Positions 26,779-64,000 of a DNA stretch of 64,000 nucleotides are shown in pieces. A model generated the notes under the pieces. It saw nothing but the letters and a program-made list of their open reading frames with translations, did no database searches and was not told the DNA's origin. The stretch spans positions 16,182,001 to 16,246,000 of the forward strand of contig CM119385.1 in NCBI GenBank assembly GCA_051294905.1, given 5' to 3'. This DNA comes from Botryllus schlosseri. Taxonomy: Eukaryota. Position 1 is the first letter of the stretch, and each line of letters starts with the position of its first letter. A program made the position numbers and the translations under genes.

Positions 26779-28077
26779 TCAATCCTTATCGATGAACGCA
26801 ACCGGCGCTGCAATAATACTGATGGTGAAAGCCAACCATCCGAAAGCGAAACTGTATCCCCAATCTACGTTATCTTGTGCCACGAATGAGCTGTATAATC
26901 CGGTATACGACGCCATTCCTATCATGATGAAAATACCTGAAAGACATGGATTTATAAGAATATTTAGGGTTCATGGAAATCTATACGCAGCAGTTGTTGA
27001 CTTTATCGGTTAACTGAATGTTACAAATGACATAAAATGCCGATTGTCGTGGATAAACCGACGGAAGAATTGCTCGAGCGAACATGGCATAACTGTGACC
27101 ATAAATCTGTATCAAGGGTAAATTGTATCGAAATGATGGAAATATCATGATATTATTTTCGATATCTCGTGGTTCGATTAGTTGGTAGATTTGAACCATG
27201 CGTATGTTTGGTACACGCAGAAATAAGATGGGAAACATGTTCGCTCTCTTTGATCTGCCCTTCCGACAAGGACATTCGCTGTTGGTAATTGCTTTCGGGG
27301 TACTGCAAAGAAATAGTCTACCTCATGTAACCAGGATCGCGTACAGAAGATACACCTTTCCAGTAAGCGGTCAAAAATTTAATATCCATAGTAAGGCCAA
27401 TCTAATTTAATCTCAATACAGTAAAATCCATCCCTTAAAATCCGACTACCAACATGAATGACTCATGGACGAATTATACGGGATGTATACAAAATATCAA
27501 TGGTTTAGGAAGGAACTCTTTTATCTTTAGGGCCAAGTTAAACACACTTAATTCGCGCAAATATATTCGGTTCACTGTTATAAAGTTCCAAACACTCGTA
27601 CGACCGCGCACCTGGCGTTTCCAAGATTCTAACAATGTATTACGCTTCTAGTTACCTCCAACAAATGCTAACACTCCTCCGACTTTCGAAATCACTTCGT
27701 TCTCACTTCTGGCACCAGCAAAGCACAAAGCCCCAACGGCACACGAGAGTATCACATCAGCCATAACATTGAATGCGATTGCGACATTCTCAGCGTCCCC
27801 CTTGTTCACTGAAAAATCAAAACCAGCCGTCAGTCGGGAAATTGAAAAATAATGTTCCGATCTGCATACTTCACGAATCTTGGTGACACAACGAACTTGT
27901 TATCCGCTCGTACTCACCATCAAACTGTTCTCCGTCGGAATAATTTTGAAAAAGACCTTGAGCGTATGTTACATTCTCCGTAGTAACGTATATCCATCCT
28001 GGAGTTGTGATCGCAATGATGTCAACTAGTAGAGCAATCGCAAGGCCCCCTCCGCTGCCTATTTTCAAAAATCCCAT
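26779..28077 (-). CDS. G1: PMP-22/EMP/MP20/claudin-superfamily tetraspan protein, 156 aa
   Basis: join(28077-27918, 27808-27656, 26936-26779); exons 160/153/158 nt, both introns phase 1, canonical sites (GATG|GTGAGT, TTTCAG|, GGAG|GTAACT, TTTCAG|); four TM segments; TPGW...QGLF, YTG and WGYSFAFGW motifs resemble LIM2/MP20; AATAAA at 26656-26651. Confidence 0.9.
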
Positions 28078-32814: not shown

Positions 32815-35641
32815 ATGGGTTTATTTCATTTCGGAAGCGCTGGAGGCCTTGGATTTGCGTTGCTCTTTGAAATCATTGCGTTGTCCACACCGGGATGGGT
32901 TTATGTAACCACCAACACCACCATGTTGAACACCACTGGATTACCTCCATACTCGTATTACAGCGTGGTTAAATCCGGTGCTTTTGGACTGTTCCACAGT
33001 GAACCCGCGCTAGATACGGAATACGGACTGTGTAAGTCGACATGAAGATCCTATGCATGTATTGTATATAGCCTATCGCCACGCGTTCTTTGCTACAAGT
33101 GCATGTAATTGAAATGCGTTTCCTATGTTTTGGCAGATTTGGGAGGTACTGCTATCGCCTCATGCGCCTGCCTGCTATGCATCGGTATGGGGTACCTGTC
33201 GGTCGGTATAGCGGCAAATCTATACAGCGGAAATTTTATGGAAGAAAAGAAACTGGGAAAGGTTGGCGGTATCATGGGAATTGCGGCAGGTAATACTCCG
33301 GGTCCTGTGGGTTCGGTCCGGAATTAGTCATATAATTTTTCGTAAGACAAAGCCAAGTTATTTTGCAATTTTCCATGTGATTTTGAGAATTTTTCGAGTT
33401 TAGGCTCCATGAAAATATTTATATGAGAGCTGAAGCTATAACAAGGGTCACCATATTTTGGGATCCAGTAAGAAGGAAAATGTAAACTTAGATTACCGGA
33501 CTACAAAACTTGTGATTAAAATTTTTACGGGAAATCCTTTCACGTTGACTATAAGAGGTCATTTATCCAGCCCTACTCTCGAACAACTAGCCCAAACGTA
33601 CGCATTGCAGATTCGACGTCATTTCTGGCCTTTTTTAGTTGAGCCTGTCCATCAGCCTGGCTGTCAAAGCTATATAGGAAGACGTATTCACAAAAAGTAG
33701 GATATTTAGGCGTCGCCAGAGGACATATTGTAACCCTACTATAAAGCATATTGATGTAAGAATTTGATAATGATTTCATTGATCATGATTTGTCTGAGGC
33801 AGTATAAAACTATATTACTTAGTAAAGAAGTGCTACAAATACCATTTCGAACACGTCTTCGCCTCCGAATAACGCACTATAATTAGGGTTACACTACGTC
33901 CCCTTTTTTAAAAGGAATTGTCCTCTTTTTTTTAAAAATTGAAAGTGTCCTCGAAGGACGCCTAAATTTCCTATTTTTTGGAAATTTGTCCTATCTTTTC
34001 AAAAAAAGTATTCAAATGGCACGAAAATGTCGACATCCAGGCAGAATTCGTATGCAGAATTGTAGAAAAGGGGGTAATGTGGGATTCGATAAAAATGACG
34101 ACCCACAAAAGTATCGTTAAAAAGTGTGTTACGACTTTTTTTCAGTCAAGACAGTACTATCGGTCGAAAAATTTGCAAAATCACCAGTTTTCCTCTCCGG
34201 TGCTGGAGCTTTCAAATTGTCCTCTTTTTAAGATCTCAAAATATTGCAACCCAAACTATATTACCATTGTAATACATTGCGATAACTAATATGGTCACAT
34301 TCAATAGGATGGTGTATGAGTAGGGCCGGGCACAATGATTCGAGTACTCGAATCTGGATCAAGTATTAATTTTAATGATTCGAGTCGAGTAGTAAAAGAC
34401 AATTTTTTCGAGTACTGAAATTTTACGCTCCTCGCCACTGAAAGGTAATTTATCAATGAGAATTATAGTTACGATACTAATTTTCACTGTTGCAACCTTG
34501 AAACCCTGATTGGAGGTATCGTAACATACGAAACGTATAGTACAAAGCTACGAAGGTTGCTGGACGTACATTTCCGACGTCATGATCATCCCACAACATT
34601 GCAATCAAGTGGAATGCAATCGGTATGGTCGAAAAATACCAAAGTATCTTTAATGTGATGGATAACAGAAATTATATTCTTTGCGATGGCATAAAGCCAT
34701 AAACGGTACATATTTGAACATCGGCGTATTACATTCAGTTATGACGTCATAATGAGTGATACTCGATTACTCGACTCGACTCGAAGCATATTATGTGATT
34801 CCGAATCGAATCACTCAGGTACTCGATTTTGCCCATGCCTATGCATGAGCATCCAAATATTGGGTAACATGATGCAGCATTTGTGCAGTCCAGTCTATGA
34901 AAATCAATCTCGTCTCAACGTCAAACTTCATCGCAGATTTGGTTGGAATGGGCAAAATCGAATCACAGCCCATTCGCAACGGGCTCCAATATTGACGTCC
35001 GAATCAAATCGAATGACTACTTTTGAAACTATTTTAAGTTAATTGAATTATAACTCCTGTAGTATGTCAAAGCGTTCAGGTCGTGCACTGCACCACGACT
35101 ATCCGTGTTGCCCACGCTTTACACGCGACATCTTGTGGCTGACTTTCCAATAAAAAGTGCTGGCAACCAAGAATGTATTATTAACAGAGACAGAGATAAT
35201 TAATACTAAGTACCCCCGATGTGTCCATTCCAGTTGATCTCTTTTCTAATCATGAGATTCGAATAAATGTGACTCATTCGAATCGAACGGTCGAATCAGC
35301 GATTTTTGTATTTTTCATTCCCAGTAATCTTCAACATTCAATATTAACTCTTTCTCGTCATGCTAGGAATATTCATCATGATCGGAATGGCCTGCTTCAC
35401 CGGACTTATTTTCGACAACCCGTTCTACGAAAAGATTTCGAACGACCCAGATTGCTGCATGTACATGCCGTATTCCCAATACTGCAAAACTGGACAGCAG
35501 TCGCAGTTTCTCGATCGCCTGAATATTTCAAGTCGGCGCCCGACTTGCAGCATTGAATACAGCTGGGGTTACAGCTTCGCTTTCGGCTGGATGGTATTCT
35601 GCATCAGCACTATCTCGGGGGCTGTCGGCTTGCTCGGGTGA
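32815..35641 (+). CDS. G2: claudin-like tetraspan protein with Cys-rich extended second loop, 214 aa
   Basis: join(32815-33031, 33137-33289, 35367-35641); exons 217/153/275 nt, phase-1 introns, canonical sites; TPGWVY, GLF, KVGGIMG, SWGYSFAFGW motifs; AATAAA at 35863. Confidence 0.9.
33443..33738. mobile_element. TAGG-family MITE in G2 intron 2
   Basis: Ends AAGGGTCACCATATTTTGG / TTGTAACCCTA; imperfect TSD CTATAACA / CTATAAAG. Confidence 0.55.
33884..34254. mobile_element. TAGG-family MITE (reverse orientation) in G2 intron 2
   Basis: Starts TAGGGTTAC; GTCCTC motifs; TSD ACTATAAT / ACTATATT. Confidence 0.7.
34321..34841. mobile_element. hAT-type MITE (TCGAAT/CTCGA-rich) in G2 intron 2
   Basis: Ends TAGGGCCGGGCA / TGCCCATGCCTA; TSD TGTATGAG / TGCATGAG; relative at 61492. 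Confidence 0.75.
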
Positions 35642-36378: not shown

Positions 36379-39300
36379 ATGGGTTTATTCAGTTACGGAA
36401 GCTCTGGCGGATTGCTCCTCGCTTTAACGTGTACTATGACGTCACTCGCCACCCCTGGCTGGATATACGCTACGATATCAATTAGCAATCCACTGGCGGA
36501 TGTAAGTCGCAGCTATTCTTTCGGATTGTTTTACAGTGAACCGCGTCTTATCACGTTTGGTCGATCCTACGCATATGGAGATGGGTTATGTAAGTATTTA
36601 TGTCTCACGTCTATTCTTAGTTTCTCACACCTACACCTCTAACGTTATGAAGGCGGCATGTACTAGTTTACAACTTTATCAGGGAGTACTCGACTATATA
36701 CGTAACTTCACAAAGTTGATTTTGTCCATGGGTGGCTTATTTAACAGTTAATCCGACGTGAGCACATTCGATTAACGCAAAATGACCAATGACATTACAA
36801 TTATGTGCAATTTTCTAAAATGTATTCAGTTGCCGTGATACAGGGGCTCTTTCGAAGTCTTCATGACAACTTAACTCCTAAGAGTGATGCAAGCAAATTC
36901 TGAAACTACTTTCTACTGTACAAAATCCAGAGTTTAAAGCAGTGGTTCCCAACCTTTCTCGACTCATCGCCCCCTAATCAATCTCGACACAAATTCTGGC
37001 CTCCCTTATTCACGGATCCTAAAAAGAGTGTGATCGGGAAATTTATGCACATAACTCTGATCGCTGGTGAATTGACTGAAAAAATGCCATTTTCCGAGGT
37101 GGTAGGTGCTCGGATAACAGGTTTCCGCGTCTACTTTCCGCTTAGTAGACCTTATTTCGCATCACATGCAGGATGAGCGGTCTTCACCTGCATTTTTGGC
37201 CTTGTTAATTGAATAGATCTCACTGGACATTCGAACATTTTCGCCCCCTTGTTTCTCAAAATCGCCCCTGGGGATGGGGCGATATCGCCCACGATGGAAA
37301 TCACTGGTCTAAGGAACCAGTAGTTTTGCTCAGAATACTGTTAAGCCATCTCATCCGCGTAAGCGGTGTCTTACAGAAAGCCTAGAAGTGAGTCGTGCTA
37401 CTGGTCAGCAGATACGGAATCAAAAATAAGAAATATCGGCCTGGTGTAAATGACCATAGCAGTCGACAAGCACCATGAACACCACACAAACTAACAAACA
37501 AACAATACTGTTAAGCAGAATTGGAAGTATATAGTATAAAAACAGAATGATACTTGATTACTTAGCACAAGTAGTCAAAACCTAATTGAGTACTCGTTAA
37601 AAGTTGAAAGACTTATTCACCGACCATCCTCTACTTTTGGGCCTTATTATGGTTCATGTAATAGCCAGTGTTGGGATGACTCAAGTCAACTTTTTCGTAT
37701 GAATTGAGTTGACTCGACTCACTTCGTAAAAATGACTTGACTTGACTTGGTGCTTCAAAAATGTGGATTGACTCGTGACTCGAAGCAAAATTTACGAGTC
37801 AATTTCAAGTCATCAACTAACGGTGTCGATTAAATCACTCTATCTCAATCATGTTTGGATTGTTCGTGACACGCCGGTGCGACTTGTCAAAGCAACCAAT
37901 CTTTCATGGCTTGTATGTTTCACTGATCCTCCATTGTCACATCACAAATACATTGACCGCAAACGAAATGATCACAGCCTGCGTAAATTTACTAGTAGTA
38001 AATCAGGGGTCACCAACACGCGGCCCGCGAGGTCATATTTAGCGGCCCGCGACGTGATTTGAGATTTCGGAAGAAAGCTGAGAAAACCATTTTGAAATGC
38101 AGTTTCAAGTATTGTTGTTGTTGTTGTTGTTTCAAAATAAGCTATTCGCCTGTGCCCAACCTCACTATTCGTCACCAGCTAAAACGGCTTTGGATATGGC
38201 AACAGCATTCCATCGAGGGAGAATAATCCGCTGAAATGAATGGGCTGGGCATATTGCCTTGAAGTGCAATGTCCAAAACACTGCCAAGATCGAGACGCTT
38301 AGAAAACGGCATAGGGAAGTGGTTCACTGAAAGGCGCGCCCCTCTTGTGGGGGCGAGTGTGAAAGCATATGAAGGTGGCGCGGAGCTGCGGTCAACTGAA
38401 AATTTTTTCGCGCCCTGCGCGATTTACGTTCAATTTACCTTTTGTGTATGGTCCGGAATTCATTATATAGAATTCTCTCGTCAACAGTCAGAACCTTCCA
38501 TGCCTTCAAACTATCCGTTTGGATTGCTAGCATTCTGGTGGCATTTTGTGATATGACGATAAGGGGAGCGAACGTTTTCAGTAGCATAAAGGGGGGCGTG
38601 TCGAAAAATGTTTGAGAACCACTGGCTTAGGGCTTCTCCACAAGATCAAGCTTTACGTGGAGATGGTATTTCAGCTAGTAACGTATCTCGTTAGCCCCAA
38701 TATCGATTCCTTATTCGCTGAAAAACGTTTCCAGTATCGTGCACAGCTCAGAGGTCAAAATAAAATGAAATTAATGATAATGATTTTTTGTTGTATTTGT
38801 AATCCTTTGATAAAATATTACTTCTTTTGTGGTCACTACACCCATTGCCTAAATTAAGTAGCACGGCGTTGTACTGACGTAGAGTTTTAAAACGGTGGTT
38901 GCCTAGTTTATACCGATATTGAATTCATGCGGCCCGCGCCCGCTACGAAATTTGAAAAGTGGCCCGCGACCCGTCTTGTGTTGGCGACCCCTGTAGTACA
39001 TTAATATAATAGCAATATATCTGTGTTTGTTAGACTACTCAGTGCATTTATTACACCGTGGTCGCCTTAATCAACTCTCTTGTATGATTTAAATAGAACG
39101 AATATAGTTTATGCGTTTATATTCTCGCGGATGTGTAGATGGGTTGTGTACTTCTCGAGGCTTGGTATTCGATCCTCTATTTTGGCTCACGTATTTCATT
39201 AGCGGTCCTGTGAGCGATACAACGCCATTTTGTTTGTATATTTAACCGTGTATTCGTTATTTGATTCAATATAGTTATAAATGGACAATCAATCTTTCTT

Positions 39301-40239
39301 CCAGACACCTACTAAAATGTAATGAGTTTGAATCATAACCCATACTTCGAAAATTCAATTTGACTTGAATTGTGACTTGACTCGTGACTTGACTTGGCTG
39401 GACTCGACTTGACCCGAGTCACCTCCAAAAAACGAGTGACTTGGCTCGACTCGAGTTATCTTCGAAAATCGATTGACTTGACTTGACTCTAGTCAAAATG
39501 GTAAATGACTCGAGATGACTCGTGACTCGAAGGTAATGACTTGATCCCAAAACTGGTAATAGCCTATCAGACTCAGGCCCATAGTTAATAGCAAATCCAA
39601 TACATGTCTACCGCTCTTCTTAATATCTTACATCTTGTGTTATTTACACACTATATTTAGAGCAATGTTGAACCGGATAACATTTTGAGAAATAGGCCTG
39701 TTACAGAATTAGCGATCGTGTTGGAATGTATAAACAACACAAAACCGCCGACTTTTACGTTAACAAATCAGAATGCTGTGGTCGTAATGTATCCATGTTA
39801 TAGACATTTCGTCGGATGCAATGTCAGTCTGCACGTGCTGCTTATGCGTCGGCCTAAGCTATATCAGCGTGGGCGTACTAGCCACCAGCCTTCGGGGAAA
39901 TCTCATTCAAAACAAGCGACTGGGTAAAGTGGGAGCGATCATGGGACTCATAGCAGGTCGGCTATCGCACAAAATCCTGTTTAGTATTTCAGCCTGGGGT
40001 TGATCGCTAACTATCATTCTACGTTGTCAGGAACGGTGATGGCGATTGGGATGGGAACATTCACTGGGCTTACTCTATCATGCCCTTTTTACAAGAATGT
40101 TATTCTCGACGGCCCGTCACTTTCTACCTACTCTTGGGGATACAGCTTTGGTTTGGGTTGGGCCGGAGTTGCACTGAGTTGGATATCTGGGATTGTCGGT
40201 CTCTTAGATAAGCCGACTCCAATCGTTCATCCTACGTAA
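36379..40239 (+). CDS. G3: claudin-like tetraspan protein, 190 aa
   Basis: join(36379-36589, 39804-39956, 40031-40239); exons 211/153/209 nt, phase-1 introns (3214 and 74 bp), canonical sites; same motifs as paralogs; AATAAA at 40318. Confidence 0.9.
36940..37306. mobile_element. hAT (Charlie-like) MITE in G3 intron 1
   Basis: Ends CAGTGGTTCCCAAC / GATGGAAATCACTG; TSD GTTTAAAG / GTCTAAGG. Confidence 0.7.
37347..37503 (+). mobile_element. 5'-truncated SINE with 13-bp TSD
   Basis: Flanked by direct repeat AATACTGTTAAGC (37334-37346, 37504-37516); (ACAA)n tail; body matches the 1321-1480 copy. Confidence 0.8.
38004..38993. mobile_element. Nested hAT MITE (CAGGGGTCACCAAC family)
   Basis: Ends CAGGGGTCACCAACAC / GTGTTGGCGACCCCTG; TSD TAGTAAAT / TAGTACAT. 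Confidence 0.8.
38317..38624. mobile_element. Third-level nested MITE
   Basis: Ends AAGTGGTTCAC / TTGAGAACCACTG; TSD GCATAGGG / GCTTAGGG. Confidence 0.6.
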
Positions 40240-44383: not shown

Positions 44384-45140
44384 TTGTATCGATTATACAA
44401 TCATCAACACTTTTTTTAATTCATCTTTGAATATATATGAAATGTAGGCTAACTAATGAATCGAAAATCATTGATGGGAGAAATTTGAAATGCTATTTAT
44501 GATTTCAATATTGCTAGACAGATAACTTCACTTGTGGTCGTTAATTTACTGCGAGACACAAGGTAGCGCCACGCTTTTAATTTATCGCGTGTTGATGCGA
44601 GTGCAAATATCGTAGCCATGACAATCACGATTGGACCTTATAAAAATGTCAGACTTGCGTCTGTGATTGACGATTCCCACTATTAGTTTATTTTTCTTGG
44701 AAGGAATTCGAAATGTTGACTTTCCTTGTTACCTTAGAGAGGGCGTGTACGCAAACGCCAAACTGCATTACCATTTCAAACGTCGGGCAAGGGACGGCCA
44801 GGACTGTAGATGAAGCTGCTTACAAAGATACGACTAAAGTACTGATAATAATTGATATTCATTGCATGATCGATATCGTCCGTTATCGGAATTTAACTGG
44901 GAGCCATCAACAAAAGCATTGCCGTAGACCAATTATACTGATTAATAAAGCGTATACCACATAGTACATATTTTGTTTATTAGGACGCCAATTGTGGAGT
45001 TACAGTAACTTACGCGACCTATTCGTATTAGTAGCATCGCTATCGCGCGTATGATGAGCCTATATAGGTCTATTTCGGGGGATTTATATGCGACTTGAAA
45101 CGAATTGAGCTTAAAATCTGTTTCAGAATATAGATAGACA

Positions 45141-48100
45141 ATGGGCCTGTTTCATTTTGGAAGTGCGGGCGGATTAGGAATTGCGCTGATTTGCGTGCTC
45201 GTTTCGTTGTCAACTCCAGGATGGGTTTACGTTACCATCCTGCCAACTGCAGCCGGAGTTACGCCCGATTATTCGGAGTCGTCGATTGCATGCGGTCTGT
45301 TTTACAGTGAACCGCAACTGAACAATTTTGGCGGTAATATGGATTACGGAAATGGACTGTGTGAGTATACAATATTTAGGTTTTATAGATAAATAAGGAC
45401 GTTGCAATATTGTCACGGAATATGCAAGAAAATGTTAGACAACGAAACGATTAACTCGAATGAACGTATTAATTGAGATGGTTGGTGTTGCTAAAGTCAA
45501 TTCACTTTGGCACCGACTATAGGGGAGTGTTCCTTAAACTTGTTAACATTTTGATCGCTCCTAGCCTATGATATTTCAAAACATTTTCCGTCCTATCTTT
45601 CCACAATGTGTGGCGATACTAAATCAAATTGTTTTGATAGGAATTAATTTCAATGCGTTTACAACTTACGTGTTAAATGCACGAATTACGAACAGCCTTG
45701 AAAGCCGTGTTGGGTGAGGAAATTTATGACGCGACGAGGATTCAAATCTTCGAGAGAAGTCGCAAAGCAAAGCATTCGGAACATATTAACCGCACGGAGA
45801 ACTCACCACGACATCAATTTTGACACTTTATTTATTGCTTGATTATATTTTCAAGTTATTCGATATTCCATATGGTTACAATACCATCAGCGCAAATATC
45901 GCAGACAATCGTCGGCATGCACTTAATTGCCGCCATGATGACCTGGCCAACGACCCAAAACTATTCCACTTTTTCTATTCGCACTGTTTCACAGACATAA
46001 CTTCTACGCAAACCTCGGTGTGTATTTGCTGCATGTGCGTTAGCCTGGGCTTCCTCGTAGTCGGCATAATGGCTAATTCATTCACTGGTAATTTCATCCG
46101 CGAAAGACGACTAGCTAAAGTCGGCGGAATTATGGGACTCGTCGCTGGTAAGAATATTTTTTGTCTGATTTTAAATCAGCAATGTTTCAACGTAGCGTTC
46201 TAAGTGGTGTGGACAGGGACATAGCGAGATTGAACGGCTCACTGCATTTGGGTTACGTCATACTTTCATTTTGGCCAAAGGCAATAGGCGTTTTGCAGGA
46301 CTTCGATCACGTGACTAGATACGCATAGCAACCACAAATTGGTTAGCAAGCTACAGTGCTAAATATCGCATAGTGTACTGTTGATTTCTGGTTGTAAACG
46401 TTTCGGAAATTTGTTGTAGAAGTCATCAGAGATTTACCTATGCTAGATGTCAATCCCGTACAAAGCACATAGAATGATATCGTCAGAATTACGCAGAAAT
46501 CCGTCGTTAACGTAGCCGTATTTCGGATACAGTATATTATCGTTTTCGGGCTGTAAACGTTCGCAAGTGTCATGGAGATGCGCAAGGATTCAAATATGTT
46601 GGATGTCTTTGATTCATGAACTATGTAACCTCCTTGCGTCAAAATGATCGACATTGTAGCCGTTATTTGGTAGTCAACTATGATTTCATGACACAAAATT
46701 CGACATTGCAGGACATTGACTGCATGATATTTATTGCAGCATTAAGTTAGGTGTGGATAGTATAGTATACTATACTATAGTTGTATTGTAGTGGTAGTTG
46801 GTAATCATTTCAGCATTTCGATGATTGATATCGATTGCAATATATATATAGGATACCGCCTAGAGACAATGACTGCCAGTGCCAGTACGTTGATGTGTTA
46901 TGAATTCATGCAATGTGCTACATACCATATATATATTAAACATCCTATGCTATTGTATGGCTTCTCAGTTGAACAATTTAAAATATTTAGACCTCTACAC
47001 CTATATTACAAGTTATTGATCATTCTGTCATGCTGCCAAGTGCCACTACCCGAAGAAAAATGATCATCAGCTCCAATTGAGGGTGCAACAAACTGTCCCG
47101 AGGCCTGGATTACTTGATTGATTGCCTGGATTGGATTACTTCACTCTATGGCACAGTGCAAATATCTTGAGTTTCAAGACATGGCTATACCACATGTATA
47201 CGAATTAATGATCTGACGAATTATCCCAAGAGAGCCGAACGTAGGCAACTAAGAAATTGATGATGCCCTCGTCAAGAATTCAGCCTGGAGCCAATTATTA
47301 TCACCACATAAAATTCGGTCATGCGGTAGAAGGCAGCGTGGTTTCATGCCAACAGAAAATGTCAGCAGATGATCTGACCACTGACTAACTGTCCTGAACT
47401 TCTTTCCCGATGTTGATGTCTGCTTTGAAAATGATATTTCATTTGTGTACAGCAAGACAAGCGCTCTTCCGTGGATGCTATATGTCTAGACAAGTGGCTA
47501 TGGAGGTAGAGGAAAATACATAGGCATAAGAGTCTCGGCAGTTATTGAACTTGATAAGGTTAACATGCATTTTTCTTCAACTATTTCTTATGCTCTGGGT
47601 ATCAAATGCACAAAGATTAATAAATTGCACTTCTTTGCAAGTTTATTTGTAAATTCAATGAATCAAAGAATATCATAAGTTCAGAATATTACGGAGTCAA
47701 TGCAAAAGAAACAATGTTAGTCGTCTTTAGAGGATGTTTCTAAGTTGGTTGAACCAATACACAGACGGGGTCAGCAACGAAGTACTATTTTACCCGAGTA
47801 CTAGCGTCATTATGAGTTTAGGCTACTTCCACTTCTTCTTGACACTTTTTAGGTAGTACTTTTTTGTCAGGTTTGGGATTTTGTCAACTAGAAAGTAGCT
47901 TTGGCGCATGATTGCATCCCTTCAAGCGTGAGGTTGTCATAACAACTGTGCAAAATAGCCCCAGTACCACGGTAACTAAATTAATTTTTGAAAATTGCAC
48001 CTATTTGTGGTGTCATCACCCTTTTGCGTTGATCAAGAAGATGCTACATGCAATGTTTACAATTGTCCCATGGCATCAATTTCTAAAACTAGGTGACCCT

Positions 48101-49774
48101 CAACCAAATCTACTTCATGTAACGAATTTCTTGACTACTTTCCAGAAATTCATTTCTACTTCCACTTGAAGTACTTTGGACATGTTCTGGAAGTAATTAG
48201 TGCTACTTGTACTGGAGTATAAATTAAGGCATTACTTCTACTCGGTTCCCAACAATGACCACGTTGACCACCTCTGGGTATAGGATGACCGATCTTGTCA
48301 CTGCGTTTGAGCTGCTCTAAGAGTTATTTGATAGTTATTTCCCTTAGTTCGCTAAATAGCACACATATGTGACATCAACTATTTATCAAAATCGCGTGTG
48401 AGTTGCCAAATCCACTTTAATTGCAGTTGCGAAGTAGTGCTAATAAAATCGGCATTGTATAAGGCAACAATAAAGTGCACTGCTTTGCTTAGTCTTGATG
48501 GCAGGTTCTCCCAAAAGATACTTCCGATGTGTTCAGCGACATTTGTTTTATAGAAGCACGCCAGCACCCAAACCAGCAGACAGTATATCCTGATCCTTGC
48601 GGGTCCCGGCTGCTTCAGTCATATCATCCATCCAAAATCAGGCTCCACAACAGACAAATAGTACTGCTTGAACTAACAAATACTCTTACCAGAATATAAA
48701 CCAATCGCTTTACTTCAAATGCATAAATTTAAGTAAATATGATCAGAGTTGAGGACCGTAATACGACTACGTTACCGATGGATTTTTGCGTAATTCTGAC
48801 GATATCATTCTAAATGCTTTGTACAGGATTGACATCTAGCATAGGTGGATCTCTGATGACTTCTACAACAAATTTCCGAAACGTTTACAACCAGAAATCA
48901 ACAGTACACTATGCGATATTCAGCACTGAAGCAGGTGCGCTAGAAAGTAGCTTGCTAACCAATTTGCGGTTGCTATGCGTATCTAGTCACGTGATCGCAG
49001 TCCTTCAAAAGGCCTATTTTACGGCCATTTTTGACCGGCTTGCCGAGCGGTAAAATATGGTAAAATATGCAGGTATCAATGGAAAGCTGCTGCTGTACTG
49101 ATTACGAGAATATAAATTATATTCTGCTCATGGTCATGGGACCCCACCAAAATCAGCCTCGAATTTTGCATTGTGTGACGCAACATTGCTGTCAGTCTCT
49201 TTCTCCCTGAGCTGCAGTCTCGTTTTGCCTGACAGAATTGTTGCGTCACAGTGCCAAAGTCGATCACAGTGCATAAATCCGAGACTGATTTTGGGGGGGT
49301 TCCACGGCCATGATCGGAATAAAATTTATATTTTCGTAATCAATACAGCAGCAGCTTTCCATTGACACCCATTCTATCAAACTTAGCGCTCGGCAAATCG
49401 GTCAAAAACGGCTGTAAAATTGCCTTTGGCCAAATTGAAAGTATGAAGTAGTCCCAAATGCCGTGAGCCGTTCAATTTGGGACAATATGGTTTCAACATC
49501 GCCTTCAACTAGATCATTATTTCAATCACTTTTTTCTGCTATTTCAAGTGTGAACGTTGTCTTGATTTTAGGAATTTTCCTTCTTATCGGAATGTCTGTC
49601 TTCACGGGATTGGCGCTGTCCACTCCGTTTTACCGGGACTTCGTGTTTGGCGATCACGATTTCGTAACCATATCGTGGGGATACAGCTTCGCTTTCGGGT
49701 GGACAGCGACTGCCATTAGCCTGCTCTCTGGAGTCGTTGGTCTTCTTGGGAATTCTGATGGCATGTCTAAATGA
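45141..49774 (+). CDS. G4: claudin-like tetraspan protein, 191 aa
   Basis: join(45141-45360, 45995-46147, 49572-49774); exons 220/153/203 nt, phase-1 introns (634 and 3424 bp), canonical sites; AATAAA at 49787. Confidence 0.9.
47762..48276. mobile_element. Nested MITE (CAGAGGTGGTCA family, AAGTAG-rich)
   Basis: Ends CAGACGGGGTCAGCAACG / GTTGACCACCTCTG; arms match the 50731/54316 element; no clean TSD. Confidence 0.55.
49017..49419. mobile_element. ~400-bp foldback element inserted in the right TIR of the intron element
   Basis: Near-complete self-complementarity (TTTTACGGCC...CAATGGAAAGCTGCTGCTGTA... / ...TACAGCAGCAGCTTTCCATTG...GGCTGTAAAA); interrupts sequence that is contiguous in the left TIR. 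Confidence 0.75.
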
Positions 49775-49989
49775 AGAGGATGAAAAAATAAATCGAAATT
49801 AGTGCTTGTATGATAAATGAAATTATGCACGCGCCGGCGAGAGAGTTATATTCGGAGGTTTAGGGAGTCAGCAGTGATATCACCAATGATCAGATATACT
49901 TGAGAGCAAACAGAGATTCAAAGGTCATTTATTTCAAGGGAAAGATTATTGTCCCATGCTATATATGTCATTGTACAATGCATCATTCG

Positions 49990-50295
49990 TCCGGAATGGA
50001 TGTTCTGATGATGATGACCGCATACCGTAAAATGCTGCACAACGATGTAGTCCTGGTCAAAGATATATTTTTTAACCGTTAAGATATGGCTCGGAAGCCT
50101 TTTTTCATCATGGAGCCGTATATTCAACTTGTATTTTAAATTTTCAATGTCAATTCACTGCAACGTCACAATGAAAGATTCGTAACGTCGAGGCTAAAAT
50201 TAAGACTGCTAAAAACATGCTTAAACAAGGTCATGTTTAAGACATGCTTGTATTGAATTGATCTTTGTTTCAAATATAACCCTATAGTAGCGCAG
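49990..50295 (+). repeat. Unclassified interspersed repeat (GATGATGATGACCGC family)
   Basis: Homologous copies at 58305-58610 (+), 63740-63860 (+) and 63005-63260 (-). Confidence 0.65.
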
Positions 50296-57275: not shown

Positions 57276-59305
57276 ATGGGCTTGATTCAATTTGGAAGTG
57301 CGGGCGGATTAGGAATTGCGCTGATTTGCGTGCTCGTTTCGTTGTCAACTCCAGGATGGGTTTACGTTACCATCCTGCCAACTGCAGCCGGAGTTACGCC
57401 CGATTATTCGGAGTCGTCGATTGCATGCGGTCTGTTTTACTGCGAACCACAACTGAACAATTTTAACGGTACCACGAAGTACGGAAATGGTCTGTGTGAG
57501 TACAGTGTTTGTGTTTGAATGACGTACCCGGGCATTGGGAATATTGGGAATATTGTAAAAATCAGCGATGTAGCGCGTAAAACGTCAGGAATCCATTATT
57601 CAGCGCATGTCAATTGTGCGAAACGGATTGAATATGGAACGTCTGTGTAAACGTTGATGGGCACAGGCATTTGATAGGGTCGATGATCTAGAGAAGCGCT
57701 TGGAACTTTTTCGGTGCTGCGAATTTAGGTTTCGGGTTACACAAATTTATCATCTATAATTGAATATACTATTTAATTGTATATTGAAGTTCTGTACCTA
57801 CAAGAAGCTGTTCGTTTATCATTTAACAGTTGGAATAATTCGTCTTTTTTAGTAAAGATTGTTCAGGGTACCGCTTGGTCAAAAGGAGCTAAATCATCAT
57901 AGCTGAAATGATCGGCACCGAATAATCCCATGCCCGCAGCTTCGCGATATAAACGCGATTCGCATAGAAAAATAATGTGCCCACTGCCCAGTGACAAAAT
58001 TCAAATTTGGAATCGAAGGAGATTTTCTAAATCAGACACGCCCCTTTTATGATGGTGTAATATTTCGCCCCCCTCTTATCGTCGTATCACAAAATGCAAC
58101 CGGAGTGCTAGCAATCCTAACGGATAGTTTGATGGTATGGAATGTTATGACTGTTGATGACAGTATTCTGAAATATGGTATTTGGACTATACACAGAGCA
58201 ATAACTATGAATTGGAGGTATTTCGCACGGAGCTCGTAAAAAAATTTCAGCTGACTGCAACTTCCGGCCCCCTTCTGGTGCTTTCACGCCCCTAGTTTGA
58301 GAACCACTGCTCTAAATCGTCGTCGGTTCTACAGTTAGCAAGTAGTGAGTAGACATAGATTTATGGTACGGATTAGGTGTTGTGATGATGATGACCGCCG
58401 ACCGTAAAAATGCTGCATAGCGATGTGGTCCCGGTTAAAGTTATTGTTGGTCCGTTTATGACAGTGCTTTTAACCCTTGTCGCCGAAGGATGCACATTTA
58501 CCCTATATTTTCAATTGTCTATGGCCATCCCATGTGACGTCAGAATTAAAGATTGGTGACATCATGGCTAGAATAAAACACACAATAAGAACCTGTTTGT
58601 TTTAAATGTAACCCTACCTGTACTGCTAACTAGCAAAACGTAAAAGATTTTAGGGTAAATTGCGGGTAAATGTGTGCAAGGAAAAGGCCCAACTGAATTC
58701 AGCCCATCCGGAGTTTTATATATCCATGAAATGGCGGAGCAAGCAGATGATAATCGCCCTTATTTATGTGCCACTATTGTGATGATATTATGGCTAGAGA
58801 TCGTGCTCAACATTTTATCCAAGTATACGTGCTGTTTTGCAGACATAACCTCCACCCAAGCCTCTGTGTGTAGCTGCTGCATGTGCGCTAGCCTGGGCTT
58901 CCTCGTGGTCGGCATAATGGTGAATTCGTTTACTGGCAATTTCATCCGCGAAAGACGACTGGCGAAATTTGGTGGAATTATGGGTCTCGTCGCCGGTAAG
59001 AAAAACTGCCTTGAAATTAATATTCAGCTACATTGAAATGAATTTTTCTAACACTGCGGGTTAACATTACCGTGATTTTAGGATTTTTTCTGGCGACCGC
59101 GATGTCTGTTTTCACGGGATTAGCGCTGTCCACCCCATTTTATCGGGACGTTGTGTTTGGCAAGGATAATTTCGGAACCATCTCGTGGGGATACAGCTTT
59201 GCTTTCGGATGGGCTGCAACTGGGACAAGCCTGCTTTCTGGAGTTGTGGGACTTCTCGGAAAGTCCGGGGGTGTATCTCCCGAGAAACACGAGTTAGATT
59301 TATAA
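57276..59305 (+). CDS. G5: claudin-like tetraspan protein, 198 aa, closest paralog of G4
   Basis: join(57276-57495, 58843-58995, 59082-59305); exons 220/153/224 nt, phase-1 introns (1347 and 86 bp), canonical sites; ends EKHELDL; AATAAA at 59334. Confidence 0.9.
58305..58610 (+). repeat. GATGATGATGACCGC-family repeat in G5 intron 1
   Basis: Homologous to 49990-50295 and 63740-63860. Confidence 0.6.
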
Positions 59306-63561: not shown

Positions 63562-64000
63562 TTTTAAACAGTGTTAAAAAAATGCCTTTTTGCAAAAAAT
63601 AATTTTTTTTCTAACGTTGTCTAATTAAGCCACAATTGTGTAAATACGCCCGAAAGGCCATGCAGTGAACCTACGGACGATTTGCACCCAAAATAGTCGA
63701 GGTATACGATGCGGGGCGGCTGGAACTCTCGAAATCGTCGTCGGTACAACAGTTTCTGCACGTAGATATAGATAATTGGTACTGAATGGGTGTTCTGATG
63801 ATGATGATGACCGCCGACCGTCCAAATGCTTCATAACGATGTAGTCATGGTTAAGGCTTCCCACATGATCTCCTCGTTTTCCATCAAATGCCATGTCTGG
63901 GTTACCCCAATACCGATTCTTCATGTAGCGTGCGTAGCTTATAGTTCAAAGAGGGATGTAATTGATCATCACGATATTTTTTAATAAAATATTATTTCTT

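What the first reader, a model, noticed from the sequence alone, without database searches (positions are those of the whole stretch)
45156..45305. 150-bp perfect identity between G4 and G5 exon 1: probable recent gene conversion
Seen: codons 6-55 of G4 (45156-45305) and G5 (57291-57440) are identical, synonymous sites included. Exon 2 differs at 21/153 nt, the last 55 nt of exon 1 at 11, the first 15 nt at 3, and introns do not align. At ~14% divergence a 150-nt identical run is very unlikely. Inference: ectopic conversion homogenised TM1 and the proximal loop, making mosaic paralogs.
Basis: partly seen in the sequence, partly recalled or inferred. Interest (0 to 1): 0.75.

Follow-up and report, generated by a model that had tools for sequence, protein, structure and literature searches.

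The report
Gene conversion patch between claudin-like paralogs
Two neighbouring claudin-like membrane-protein genes of a sea squirt share a 150-base stretch that is letter-for-letter identical because one gene's copy was pasted over the other's, an ordinary process (gene conversion) caught here with its donor, its limits and an unconverted version all visible.

Summary
Window 45156-45305 (G4) and 57291-57440 (G5) are identical at 150/150 bases. The rest of the two coding sequences differs at 80/420 sites (19%; synonymous 47%), and the introns do not align. Chance is excluded: 0 of 200,000 permutations reached a 150-base run, and analytic estimates are 1e-8 to 1e-12.

It is not an assembly artefact. 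In contigs built from raw reads of the likely source sample, the tract is one 150-nt unitig. Two branches (G4-type and G5-type) join it on each side, and no other letters occur inside it.

A low-coverage DNA run of a sister organism, and an RNA run labelled as the same species, carry a G4 with 9 differences inside the tract. The sister organism's G5 matches the reference tract with no difference listed. So G5 overwrote G4 in the reference lineage, over 112-150 nt.

Even the unconverted pair is under-diverged in the tract (6% against 17%; synonymous 13% against 47%). This suggests an earlier conversion at the same place.

The genes belong to a seven-member tandem array of PMP22/claudin-superfamily genes. 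The tract encodes TM1 and the first part of extracellular loop 1, and conversion changed three loop residues.

The mechanism is textbook, so interest is modest.

The parts
45156..45305 (+). Converted tract in G4 (recipient): codons 6-55, encoding TM1 and the first ~23 residues of extracellular loop 1. This is the maximal extent, bounded by retained G4/G5 differences at 45155 and 45306.
   Evidence: 150/150 identity. (one 150-nt unitig in raw-read contigs of X1, depth 24.8, against 16+17.5 and 12+13.6 on the flanking branches).
45167..45278 (+). Minimal converted segment (112 nt), spanning the 9 sites at which the unconverted G4 haplotype differs from the reference: 45167, 45170, 45176, 45203, 45262, 45263, 45266, 45268, 45278.
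   Evidence: X17 contigs 10 and 13; X23 reads, 24-30 of 24-30 at each site except 45268, where 27 of 29 show it. (5 synonymous changes; the rest give residue changes at codons 41, 43 and 46).
57291..57440 (+). Donor tract in G5.
   Evidence: organism B contig 11 carries G5's own upstream flank and matches 45156-45233 with no difference inside the tract. Contig 12 carries the G5-type T at 45306 and no listed difference in 45204-45305.
45141..45360 (+). G4 first coding exon (220 nt, phase-1 donor GTGAGT).
   Evidence: The splice 45360>45995 (GT..AG) is seen in the X5 contig and in 24 X23 reads.
45995..46147 (+). G4 coding exon 2 (153 nt).
49572..49774 (+). G4 coding exon 3, ending at the stop codon.
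   Evidence: Loose ends behind 46148 in X5 and X23 read into the exon 3 sequence.
57276..57495 (+). G5 first coding exon.
58843..58995 (+). G5 coding exon 2.
59082..59305 (+). G5 coding exon 3, ending at the stop codon.
45125..45126 (+). AG acceptor 14 nt upstream of the G4 ATG, used for addition of the spliced leader.
   Evidence: table 7 (24 X23 reads: template-switch oligo end, then the 22-nt leader, then the exon). (the leader equals the published stolidobranch ascidian SL).

Best explanation
A short-tract, non-reciprocal interlocus gene conversion. G4 and G5 are the two most similar members of a seven-gene tandem array of PMP22/claudin-superfamily genes, 12 kb apart in the same orientation. 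In the lineage leading to the reference individual, a break in G4's first coding exon was most likely repaired by homologous recombination using G5 as template (synthesis-dependent strand annealing or mismatch repair of heteroduplex). This copied 112-150 nt of G5 into G4 and left G5 unchanged, so the G4 gene became a mosaic. Its TM1 and proximal ECL1 are now G5-type: three loop residues changed (I41T, G43D, D46E) along with five synonymous sites. The rest of the gene stays 19% diverged. Shown: the identity, its statistical improbability, its presence in raw-read contigs, the divergent flanks, the unconverted G4 haplotype elsewhere and the unchanged G5 in the sister organism. Inferred: the repair pathway, germline timing, and that an older conversion had already homogenised the same segment.
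For: The identity is 150/150 with 0 of 41.3 synonymous sites changed, against pS 0.47 elsewhere. The permutation P is below 5e-6 and analytic estimates run 1e-8 to 1e-12. Divergence resumes on both sides inside the same exon (3/15 and 11/55), and the introns are unalignable. This is a patch, not a crossover or a young duplication. Only two copies of the exon exist in the genome, so there is no third donor. Raw-read contigs of X1 show one tract unitig of exactly 150 nt. The G4-type and G5-type branches overlap it by k-1 = 30 nt at each end. Tract depth is about the sum of the branches, and no alternative letters occur inside. An independent RNA sample, X5, has a spliced G4 contig with 0 differences through the tract. 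Organism B (X17, DNA) and X23 (RNA raw reads) show G4 with the same 9 in-tract differences, linked to G4-specific flanks. Organism B's G5, identified by its own upstream flank and by the T at 45306, matches the reference tract. If instead one ancestral conversion were followed by ordinary divergence, all 9 changes would have to fall on one of four equal branches: P about 1.5e-5. RNA structure does not explain the identity (z = -1.15). Protein constraint does not either, because residues 32-50 are the most variable, indel-rich part of the family alignment.
Against: Organism B coverage is only 2-4x, and its G5 contigs cover the tract in two overlapping pieces. One of the 4 'other letters' of contig 12 is unlocated. 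G4(ref) against G4(B) differs at 9/150 in the tract and 6/208 in the other exon sequence covered (one search's Fisher test, run on a 223-nt denominator, gave p = 0.18). So the excess in the tract is not significant on its own; the direction argument rests on G5(B) being unchanged. X1 may be the very sample the assembly came from, and Logan contigs drop rare variants. Whether X23 is truly the same species as the reference, which would make the conversion polymorphic, or a cryptic lineage is unknown.
Confidence: 0.88

Rival explanations
1. There was an older single conversion. The tract was homogenised once in the common ancestor of the reference lineage and organism B, and the 9 differences are later substitutions on the G4 branch of the B/X23 lineage. 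It is still gene conversion, but not recent, and its direction would be unknown.
For: The boundaries of low divergence in organism B (first difference at 45167, last at 45278) lie inside the same 45156-45305 block. G4(ref) against G4(B) divergence in the tract (6%) is not significantly above that of other exon sequence (2.9% of 208 nt; the test, on a 223-nt denominator, gave p = 0.18).
Against: It requires 9 changes on one branch and 0-1 on the three other branches of equal age (G4 ref, G5 ref, G5 B): P about 1.5e-5. Five of the nine sit in 17 nt, including a double change in one codon, which is unlike clock-like accumulation.
Confidence: 0.06
2. It is an assembly or polishing artefact: reads of one paralog were used to correct the other, erasing real differences.
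For: A 150-nt window flanked by similar sequence is the size at which short-read polishing can cross-map.
Against: De Bruijn contigs made directly from the raw reads of X1 hold a single version of the tract, at about summed depth, with both flank types attached. An independent RNA sample (X5) gives the same G4 sequence across tract, G4-specific exon end and exon 2.
Confidence: 0.02
3. The stretch is conserved at the nucleotide level by selection, for example an RNA structure, an embedded regulatory element or an antisense transcript, without any recombination.
For: The tract lies at the 5' end of the coding sequence, where mRNA structure and translation-initiation effects can constrain synonymous sites. 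Even the unconverted pair has low pS here (0.13).
Against: The unconverted G4 haplotype carries 5 synonymous and about 4 non-synonymous changes and is expressed (X23). Fold energy is ordinary (z = -1.15). The other five paralogs are not conserved here at all. Selection does not produce sharp edges with 20% divergence directly on both sides.
Confidence: 0.02
4. It is a chimeric gene from unequal crossing-over, or a recent partial duplication of the exon.
For: Tandem arrays do undergo unequal crossing-over.
Against: A single crossover would leave identity running to one end of the duplicated unit. Here old divergence resumes within 15 nt upstream and immediately downstream, and introns and flanks are unalignable. 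Array order and both flank types are the same in organism B.
Confidence: 0.02

Closest known systems
Interlocus gene conversion between tandem duplicates; the classic case is human fetal globin HBG1/HBG2 (Slightom et al. 1980). Cited from my own knowledge, not checked here.
   Same: Two same-orientation tandem paralogs carry a sharply bounded block of identity inside otherwise diverged genes. The transfer is non-reciprocal, and converted and unconverted versions both exist among haplotypes.
   Different: The tract here is much shorter (112-150 nt against about 1.5 kb) and lies wholly inside one coding exon. The genes are 4-TM membrane proteins of an ascidian.
Short-patch non-allelic conversions such as CYP21A1P to CYP21A2, RHD/RHCE and the red/green opsin genes. 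From my own knowledge.
   Same: Patch length is tens to a few hundred bases. The donor is a neighbouring paralog, and amino-acid changes are transferred as a block.
   Different: No pseudogene and no disease context are involved here. Both genes have intact reading frames and canonical splice sites, and G4 at least is transcribed.
PMP22/EMP/MP20/claudin superfamily (Pfam PF00822, PF13903).
   Same: Pfam scores are above the gathering thresholds. There are four hydrophobic segments, a large first extracellular loop and a W...GLF motif at the loop ends.
   Different: The canonical claudin ECL1 signature (W-GLW-C-C) is not kept: F replaces W, and the cysteines are not at the signature spacing. 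The genes are best called claudin-like and cannot be assigned to a vertebrate claudin orthologue. The Pfam match covers residues 78-180 only, not the converted part.

Membership tests
Interlocus (ectopic) gene conversion tract | A run of identity between paralogs far longer than the surrounding divergence allows | tested here: met
   150/150 identical against 80/420 elsewhere. The longest run in 200,000 permutations was 102, and analytic P is 1e-8 to 1e-12.
Interlocus (ectopic) gene conversion tract | Old divergence resumes on both sides (a patch, not a crossover or a young duplicate) | tested here: met
   3/15 differences upstream and 11/55 downstream within the same exon. Introns and flanks are unalignable.
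Interlocus (ectopic) gene conversion tract | Present in the DNA of the organism, not created by assembly | tested here: met
   X1 raw-read contigs give one 150-nt tract unitig with two branches on each side and no other letters. The X5 RNA contig is identical. This was done with contigs, not single long reads.
Interlocus (ectopic) gene conversion tract | An unconverted orthologue or allele of the recipient exists, and the donor is unchanged (non-reciprocal, direction known) | tested here: met
   G4 of organism B (X17) and of X23 has 9 in-tract differences. G5 of organism B equals the reference tract except for at most one unlocated letter. Coverage is low (2-4x) and G5 is seen only through reads laid on G4.
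Interlocus (ectopic) gene conversion tract | The event is observed directly (pedigree, sperm typing) or its repair pathway is identified | not testable with these tools
   None.
PMP22/EMP/MP20/claudin superfamily | Pfam profile match above the curated threshold | tested here: met
   PF00822 scores 32.9 bits (cut-off 26.7) and PF13903 scores 31.7 bits (cut-off 29.1).
PMP22/EMP/MP20/claudin superfamily | Four transmembrane segments with a large first extracellular loop | tested here: met
   The Kyte-Doolittle scan (19-residue windows with mean above 1.4) flags residues 1-35, 73-105, 112-145 and 164-184. I read TM1-TM4 cores of about 8-31, 83-105, 117-140 and 164-184 from these. No 3D model was made.
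Claudins proper | ECL1 signature W-x(17-22)-[GN]-L-W-x(2)-C-x(8-10)-C (recalled from memory) | tested here: not met
   G4 has W28...G52-L-F54 with C50 before the motif and no C at +3. G5 has GLFYC. The genes are therefore claudin-like only.

The most novel reading that the evidence does not exclude
The segment encoding TM1 and proximal ECL1 is a recurrent conversion hotspot. It would have been homogenised at least twice within nearly the same boundaries, and converted and unconverted G4 haplotypes (differing by three loop residues, including a gained negative charge) would segregate within a nominal ascidian species. Selection on matching extracellular loops of co-expressed claudin-like paralogs could maintain this concerted evolution of only the contact-forming part of the protein.
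Probability: 0.15. Interest if true: 0.5.

Novelty: new member of a known kind. Interest (0 to 1): 0.3.

Why it matters
This is a clean natural example of short-tract interlocus gene conversion in a tunicate. Donor, recipient, tract limits (112-150 nt) and an extant unconverted haplotype can all be read from public data. It also carries three practical warnings. Trees or dS-based ages for this claudin-like array will be wrong if the first coding exon is included. Short reads and 31-mers cannot tell G4 from G5 over this stretch, which matters for expression counts. And the paralogs are mosaics, so orthology calls between closely related lineages can differ exon by exon. It does not reveal a new mechanism.

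Tried and rejected
- **Protein database search with G4:** only one weak hit (56% identity over 32% of the query, from a Logan contig). No orthologues could be fetched that way, so dating with more distant species was not possible.
- **RNA-structure explanation:** the tract folds no better than shuffles (z = -1.15).
- **Third donor or surviving unconverted copy in the reference genome:** the B-type 22-mer around 45260-45281 is absent from the genome at 2 mismatches or fewer, apart from one unrelated site on another contig. Exon DNA has only two copies.
- **GC-biased conversion:** of the 9 changes, 6 go from A/T to G/C and 3 the other way. That is too few to say anything.
- **Literature search for gene conversion in claudin arrays:** nothing specific came up; the hits use the words in other contexts.
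- **Earlier findings of the scan:** nothing on gene conversion elsewhere in this genome.
- **Structure prediction:** not run. The spliced protein is not a direct translation of a stored stretch, and the fold is not needed for the conclusion.
- **Laying reads on G5:** G5 was read only through its reads and contigs that also fit G4 at 90% likeness or more.

Full report
**Observation**

Read in register (offset 12135), G4 and G5 are identical over exactly 45156-45305 = 57291-57440. That is 150 nt, covering codons 6-55.

I built the gene models from tblastn hits and splice sites:
- G4: 45141-45360, 45995-46147, 49572-49774 (191 aa)
- G5: 57276-57495, 58843-58995, 59082-59305 (198 aa)

All introns are GT..AG and phase 1.

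Differences by segment:

| Segment | Differences |
|---|---|
| First 15 nt | 3/15 |
| Tract | 0/150 |
| Rest of the first coding exon | 11/55 |
| Exon 2 | 21/153 |
| Aligned exon 3 | 45/197 |

Outside the tract this totals 80/420 (19%), with pS 0.47 and dS 0.74. Only the "~14%" background is an underestimate, since it is the value for exon 2 alone.

The tract holds 41.3 synonymous sites with no change. That gives P = 4e-12 at the gene's pS, and 2e-8 even at the lowest local pS. In 200,000 permutations of the 80 differences the longest clean run was 102, with a mean of 32.

blastn between the two gene regions finds only the three exons and two small repeat fragments, so the introns and flanks do not align. 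The exon has only these two copies in the 495-Mb genome.

**Is it real DNA?**

In X1, the best DNA holder and probably the source sample, the k=31 contigs give a textbook repeat bubble:
- a 1235-nt contig carries G4's upstream flank and runs to 45185;
- a 367-nt contig carries the three G5-type letters and also ends at 45185;
- one contig covers exactly 150 nt, 45156-45305, with 0 other letters;
- two contigs start at 45276, one G4-type running on through intron 1 and exon 2, one G5-type.

Depths are 16 and 17.5 on the left branches, 24.8 on the tract, and 12 and 13.6 on the right branches. So both loci, on both haplotypes, carry a single version of the tract. The polishing or collapse rival fails, with the caveat that contigs drop rare variants.

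X5 comes from another study and behaves as RNA. Its 541-nt contig runs through the tract, the G4-specific exon end, the 45360>45995 splice and exon 2 with 0 differences.

**The unconverted version and the direction**

Two data sets show G4 with the same nine in-tract differences: X17 (DNA of a second organism, "B", 2-4x depth) and X23 (2026 RNA-seq raw reads labelled as the reference species). The sites are 45167 G>T, 45170 C>T, 45176 A>G, 45203 T>G, 45262 C>T, 45263 G>T, 45266 C>T, 45268 A>G and 45278 G>T.

In X23 these appear in 24-30 of 24-30 reads per site, except 45268, where 27 of 29 reads show the change. They come with 45329, 45344 and four exon 2 sites.

In X17 the variant contigs carry G4's own upstream flank (contig 10, 44792-45233) and G4-type letters at the flanking diagnostic sites.

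Organism B's G5 is recognisable in two ways:
- Its loose end reads G5's own upstream sequence (contig 11, 45141-45233, with only the three G5-specific letters).
- It has the G5-type T at 45306 (contig 12, 45204-45329).

It shows no listed difference inside the tract.

So in B the two genes differ at 9/150 and G5(B) equals the reference tract. The parsimonious reading is that G5 overwrote G4 in the reference lineage. The tract spans at least 45167-45278 (112 nt) and at most 45156-45305 (150 nt).

The alternative is one ancestral conversion followed by nine substitutions on the G4(B) branch only, with none on the other three equal-length branches. Its probability is about 1.5e-5.

Of the nine changes, five are synonymous. 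The rest give I41T, G43D and D46E in the direction unconverted to converted.

**Probably not the first event**

In the unconverted state the tract still differs less than its surroundings. It shows 9/150 against 38/223 in the rest of exons 1-2 (Fisher p = 0.0014). Synonymous sites show pS 0.13 against 0.47 (p = 0.0008).

Protein constraint cannot explain this. In the alignment of five array members, residues 32-50 are the most variable, indel-rich part. An older conversion with nearly the same limits is the simplest explanation, but this is inference.

**What the genes are**

G4 passes the Pfam gathering thresholds for PMP22_Claudin and Claudin_2. It has four hydrophobic segments. The scan flags residues 1-35, 73-105, 112-145 and 164-184, from which I read TM cores of about 8-31, 83-105, 117-140 and 164-184.

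The tract therefore encodes TM1 and about the first 23 residues of ECL1. The canonical claudin ECL1 signature is not kept, so "claudin-like" is the safe name.

The array has seven members on the contig: five in the window and two just beyond it. G4 and G5 are by far the closest pair.

**Other rivals**

- The tract's RNA fold is unremarkable (z = -1.15).
- No third copy exists.
- A single unequal crossover cannot give divergence on both sides.

**Context noticed**

X23 reads show the G4 mRNA begins with a 22-nt leader joined at the AG at 45125-45126, 14 nt before the ATG. With that AG, the leader equals the spliced leader published for stolidobranch ascidians: Botryllus, Halocynthia, Boltenia, Herdmania and Polyandrocarpa (PMC3795323, Table 1 and supplements). 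It has 426 dispersed copies in the genome and none in the window.

So the organism is most likely a stolidobranch ascidian, and G4 is SL trans-spliced.

**Verdict**

The phenomenon is well known, so novelty is "new member of a known kind" and interest is modest.

The open point that could raise interest is whether converted and unconverted haplotypes segregate within one population, and whether this exon segment is a recurrent, possibly selected, conversion target.

Noticed in passing
window 45125-45127 (acceptor); genome-wide copies, e.g. L003-L008 at position 1501: G4 mRNA is trans-spliced to the stolidobranch-ascidian spliced leader (GATTGGAGTATTTGGTTGTATTAAG; PMC3795323). The 22-mer occurs 426 times dispersed in the genome. 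Of six copies inspected, three are followed by AAG|GT, and all six have a CTGGACC...GGTC hairpin about 45-65 nt downstream. These are likely SL RNA genes or pseudogenes. G5 also has an AG acceptor 10 nt before its ATG.
   Followed up: partly
window 26782-28077(-), 32815-35641, 36379-40239, 45141-49774, 57276-59305; beyond the window at +66454-70357 and about +74055: This is a seven-member tandem array of claudin-like (PMP22 superfamily) genes on one contig. All have the same three-coding-exon, phase-1 structure where modelled (G2-G6).
   Followed up: partly
runs X23 and X17: An RNA run labelled as the reference species carries, at every overlapping site, the same G4 haplotype as the DNA run of 'organism B'. 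That is 15 differences from the reference over 373 nt of exon. Possible explanations are cryptic lineages or mislabelling within a species complex, introgression, or deep shared polymorphism.
   Followed up: no
window 46283-46526 and 48756-49018: Inverted repeats (72 + 177 nt arms, 93-94% complementary) lie 2.2-2.6 kb apart inside G4 intron 2. This looks like a terminal-inverted-repeat transposon insertion and explains why that intron is 3.4 kb against 86 nt in G5.
   Followed up: no
window 35420-35565 (G2 exon 3): G2 has an insertion of about 31 residues with four cysteines in extracellular loop 2 relative to G3-G6.
   Followed up: partly
window 49989-50203, 58366-58577, 63779-63854: A repeated element with a TGATGATGATGACCGC core lies downstream of G4, inside G5 intron 1 and again further downstream. 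Its nature was not determined.
   Followed up: no
window 46216-46250: Read depth jumps from about 12 to over 11,000 in X1, with many different loose ends. This marks the edge of a very high-copy repeat just after G4 exon 2.
   Followed up: no
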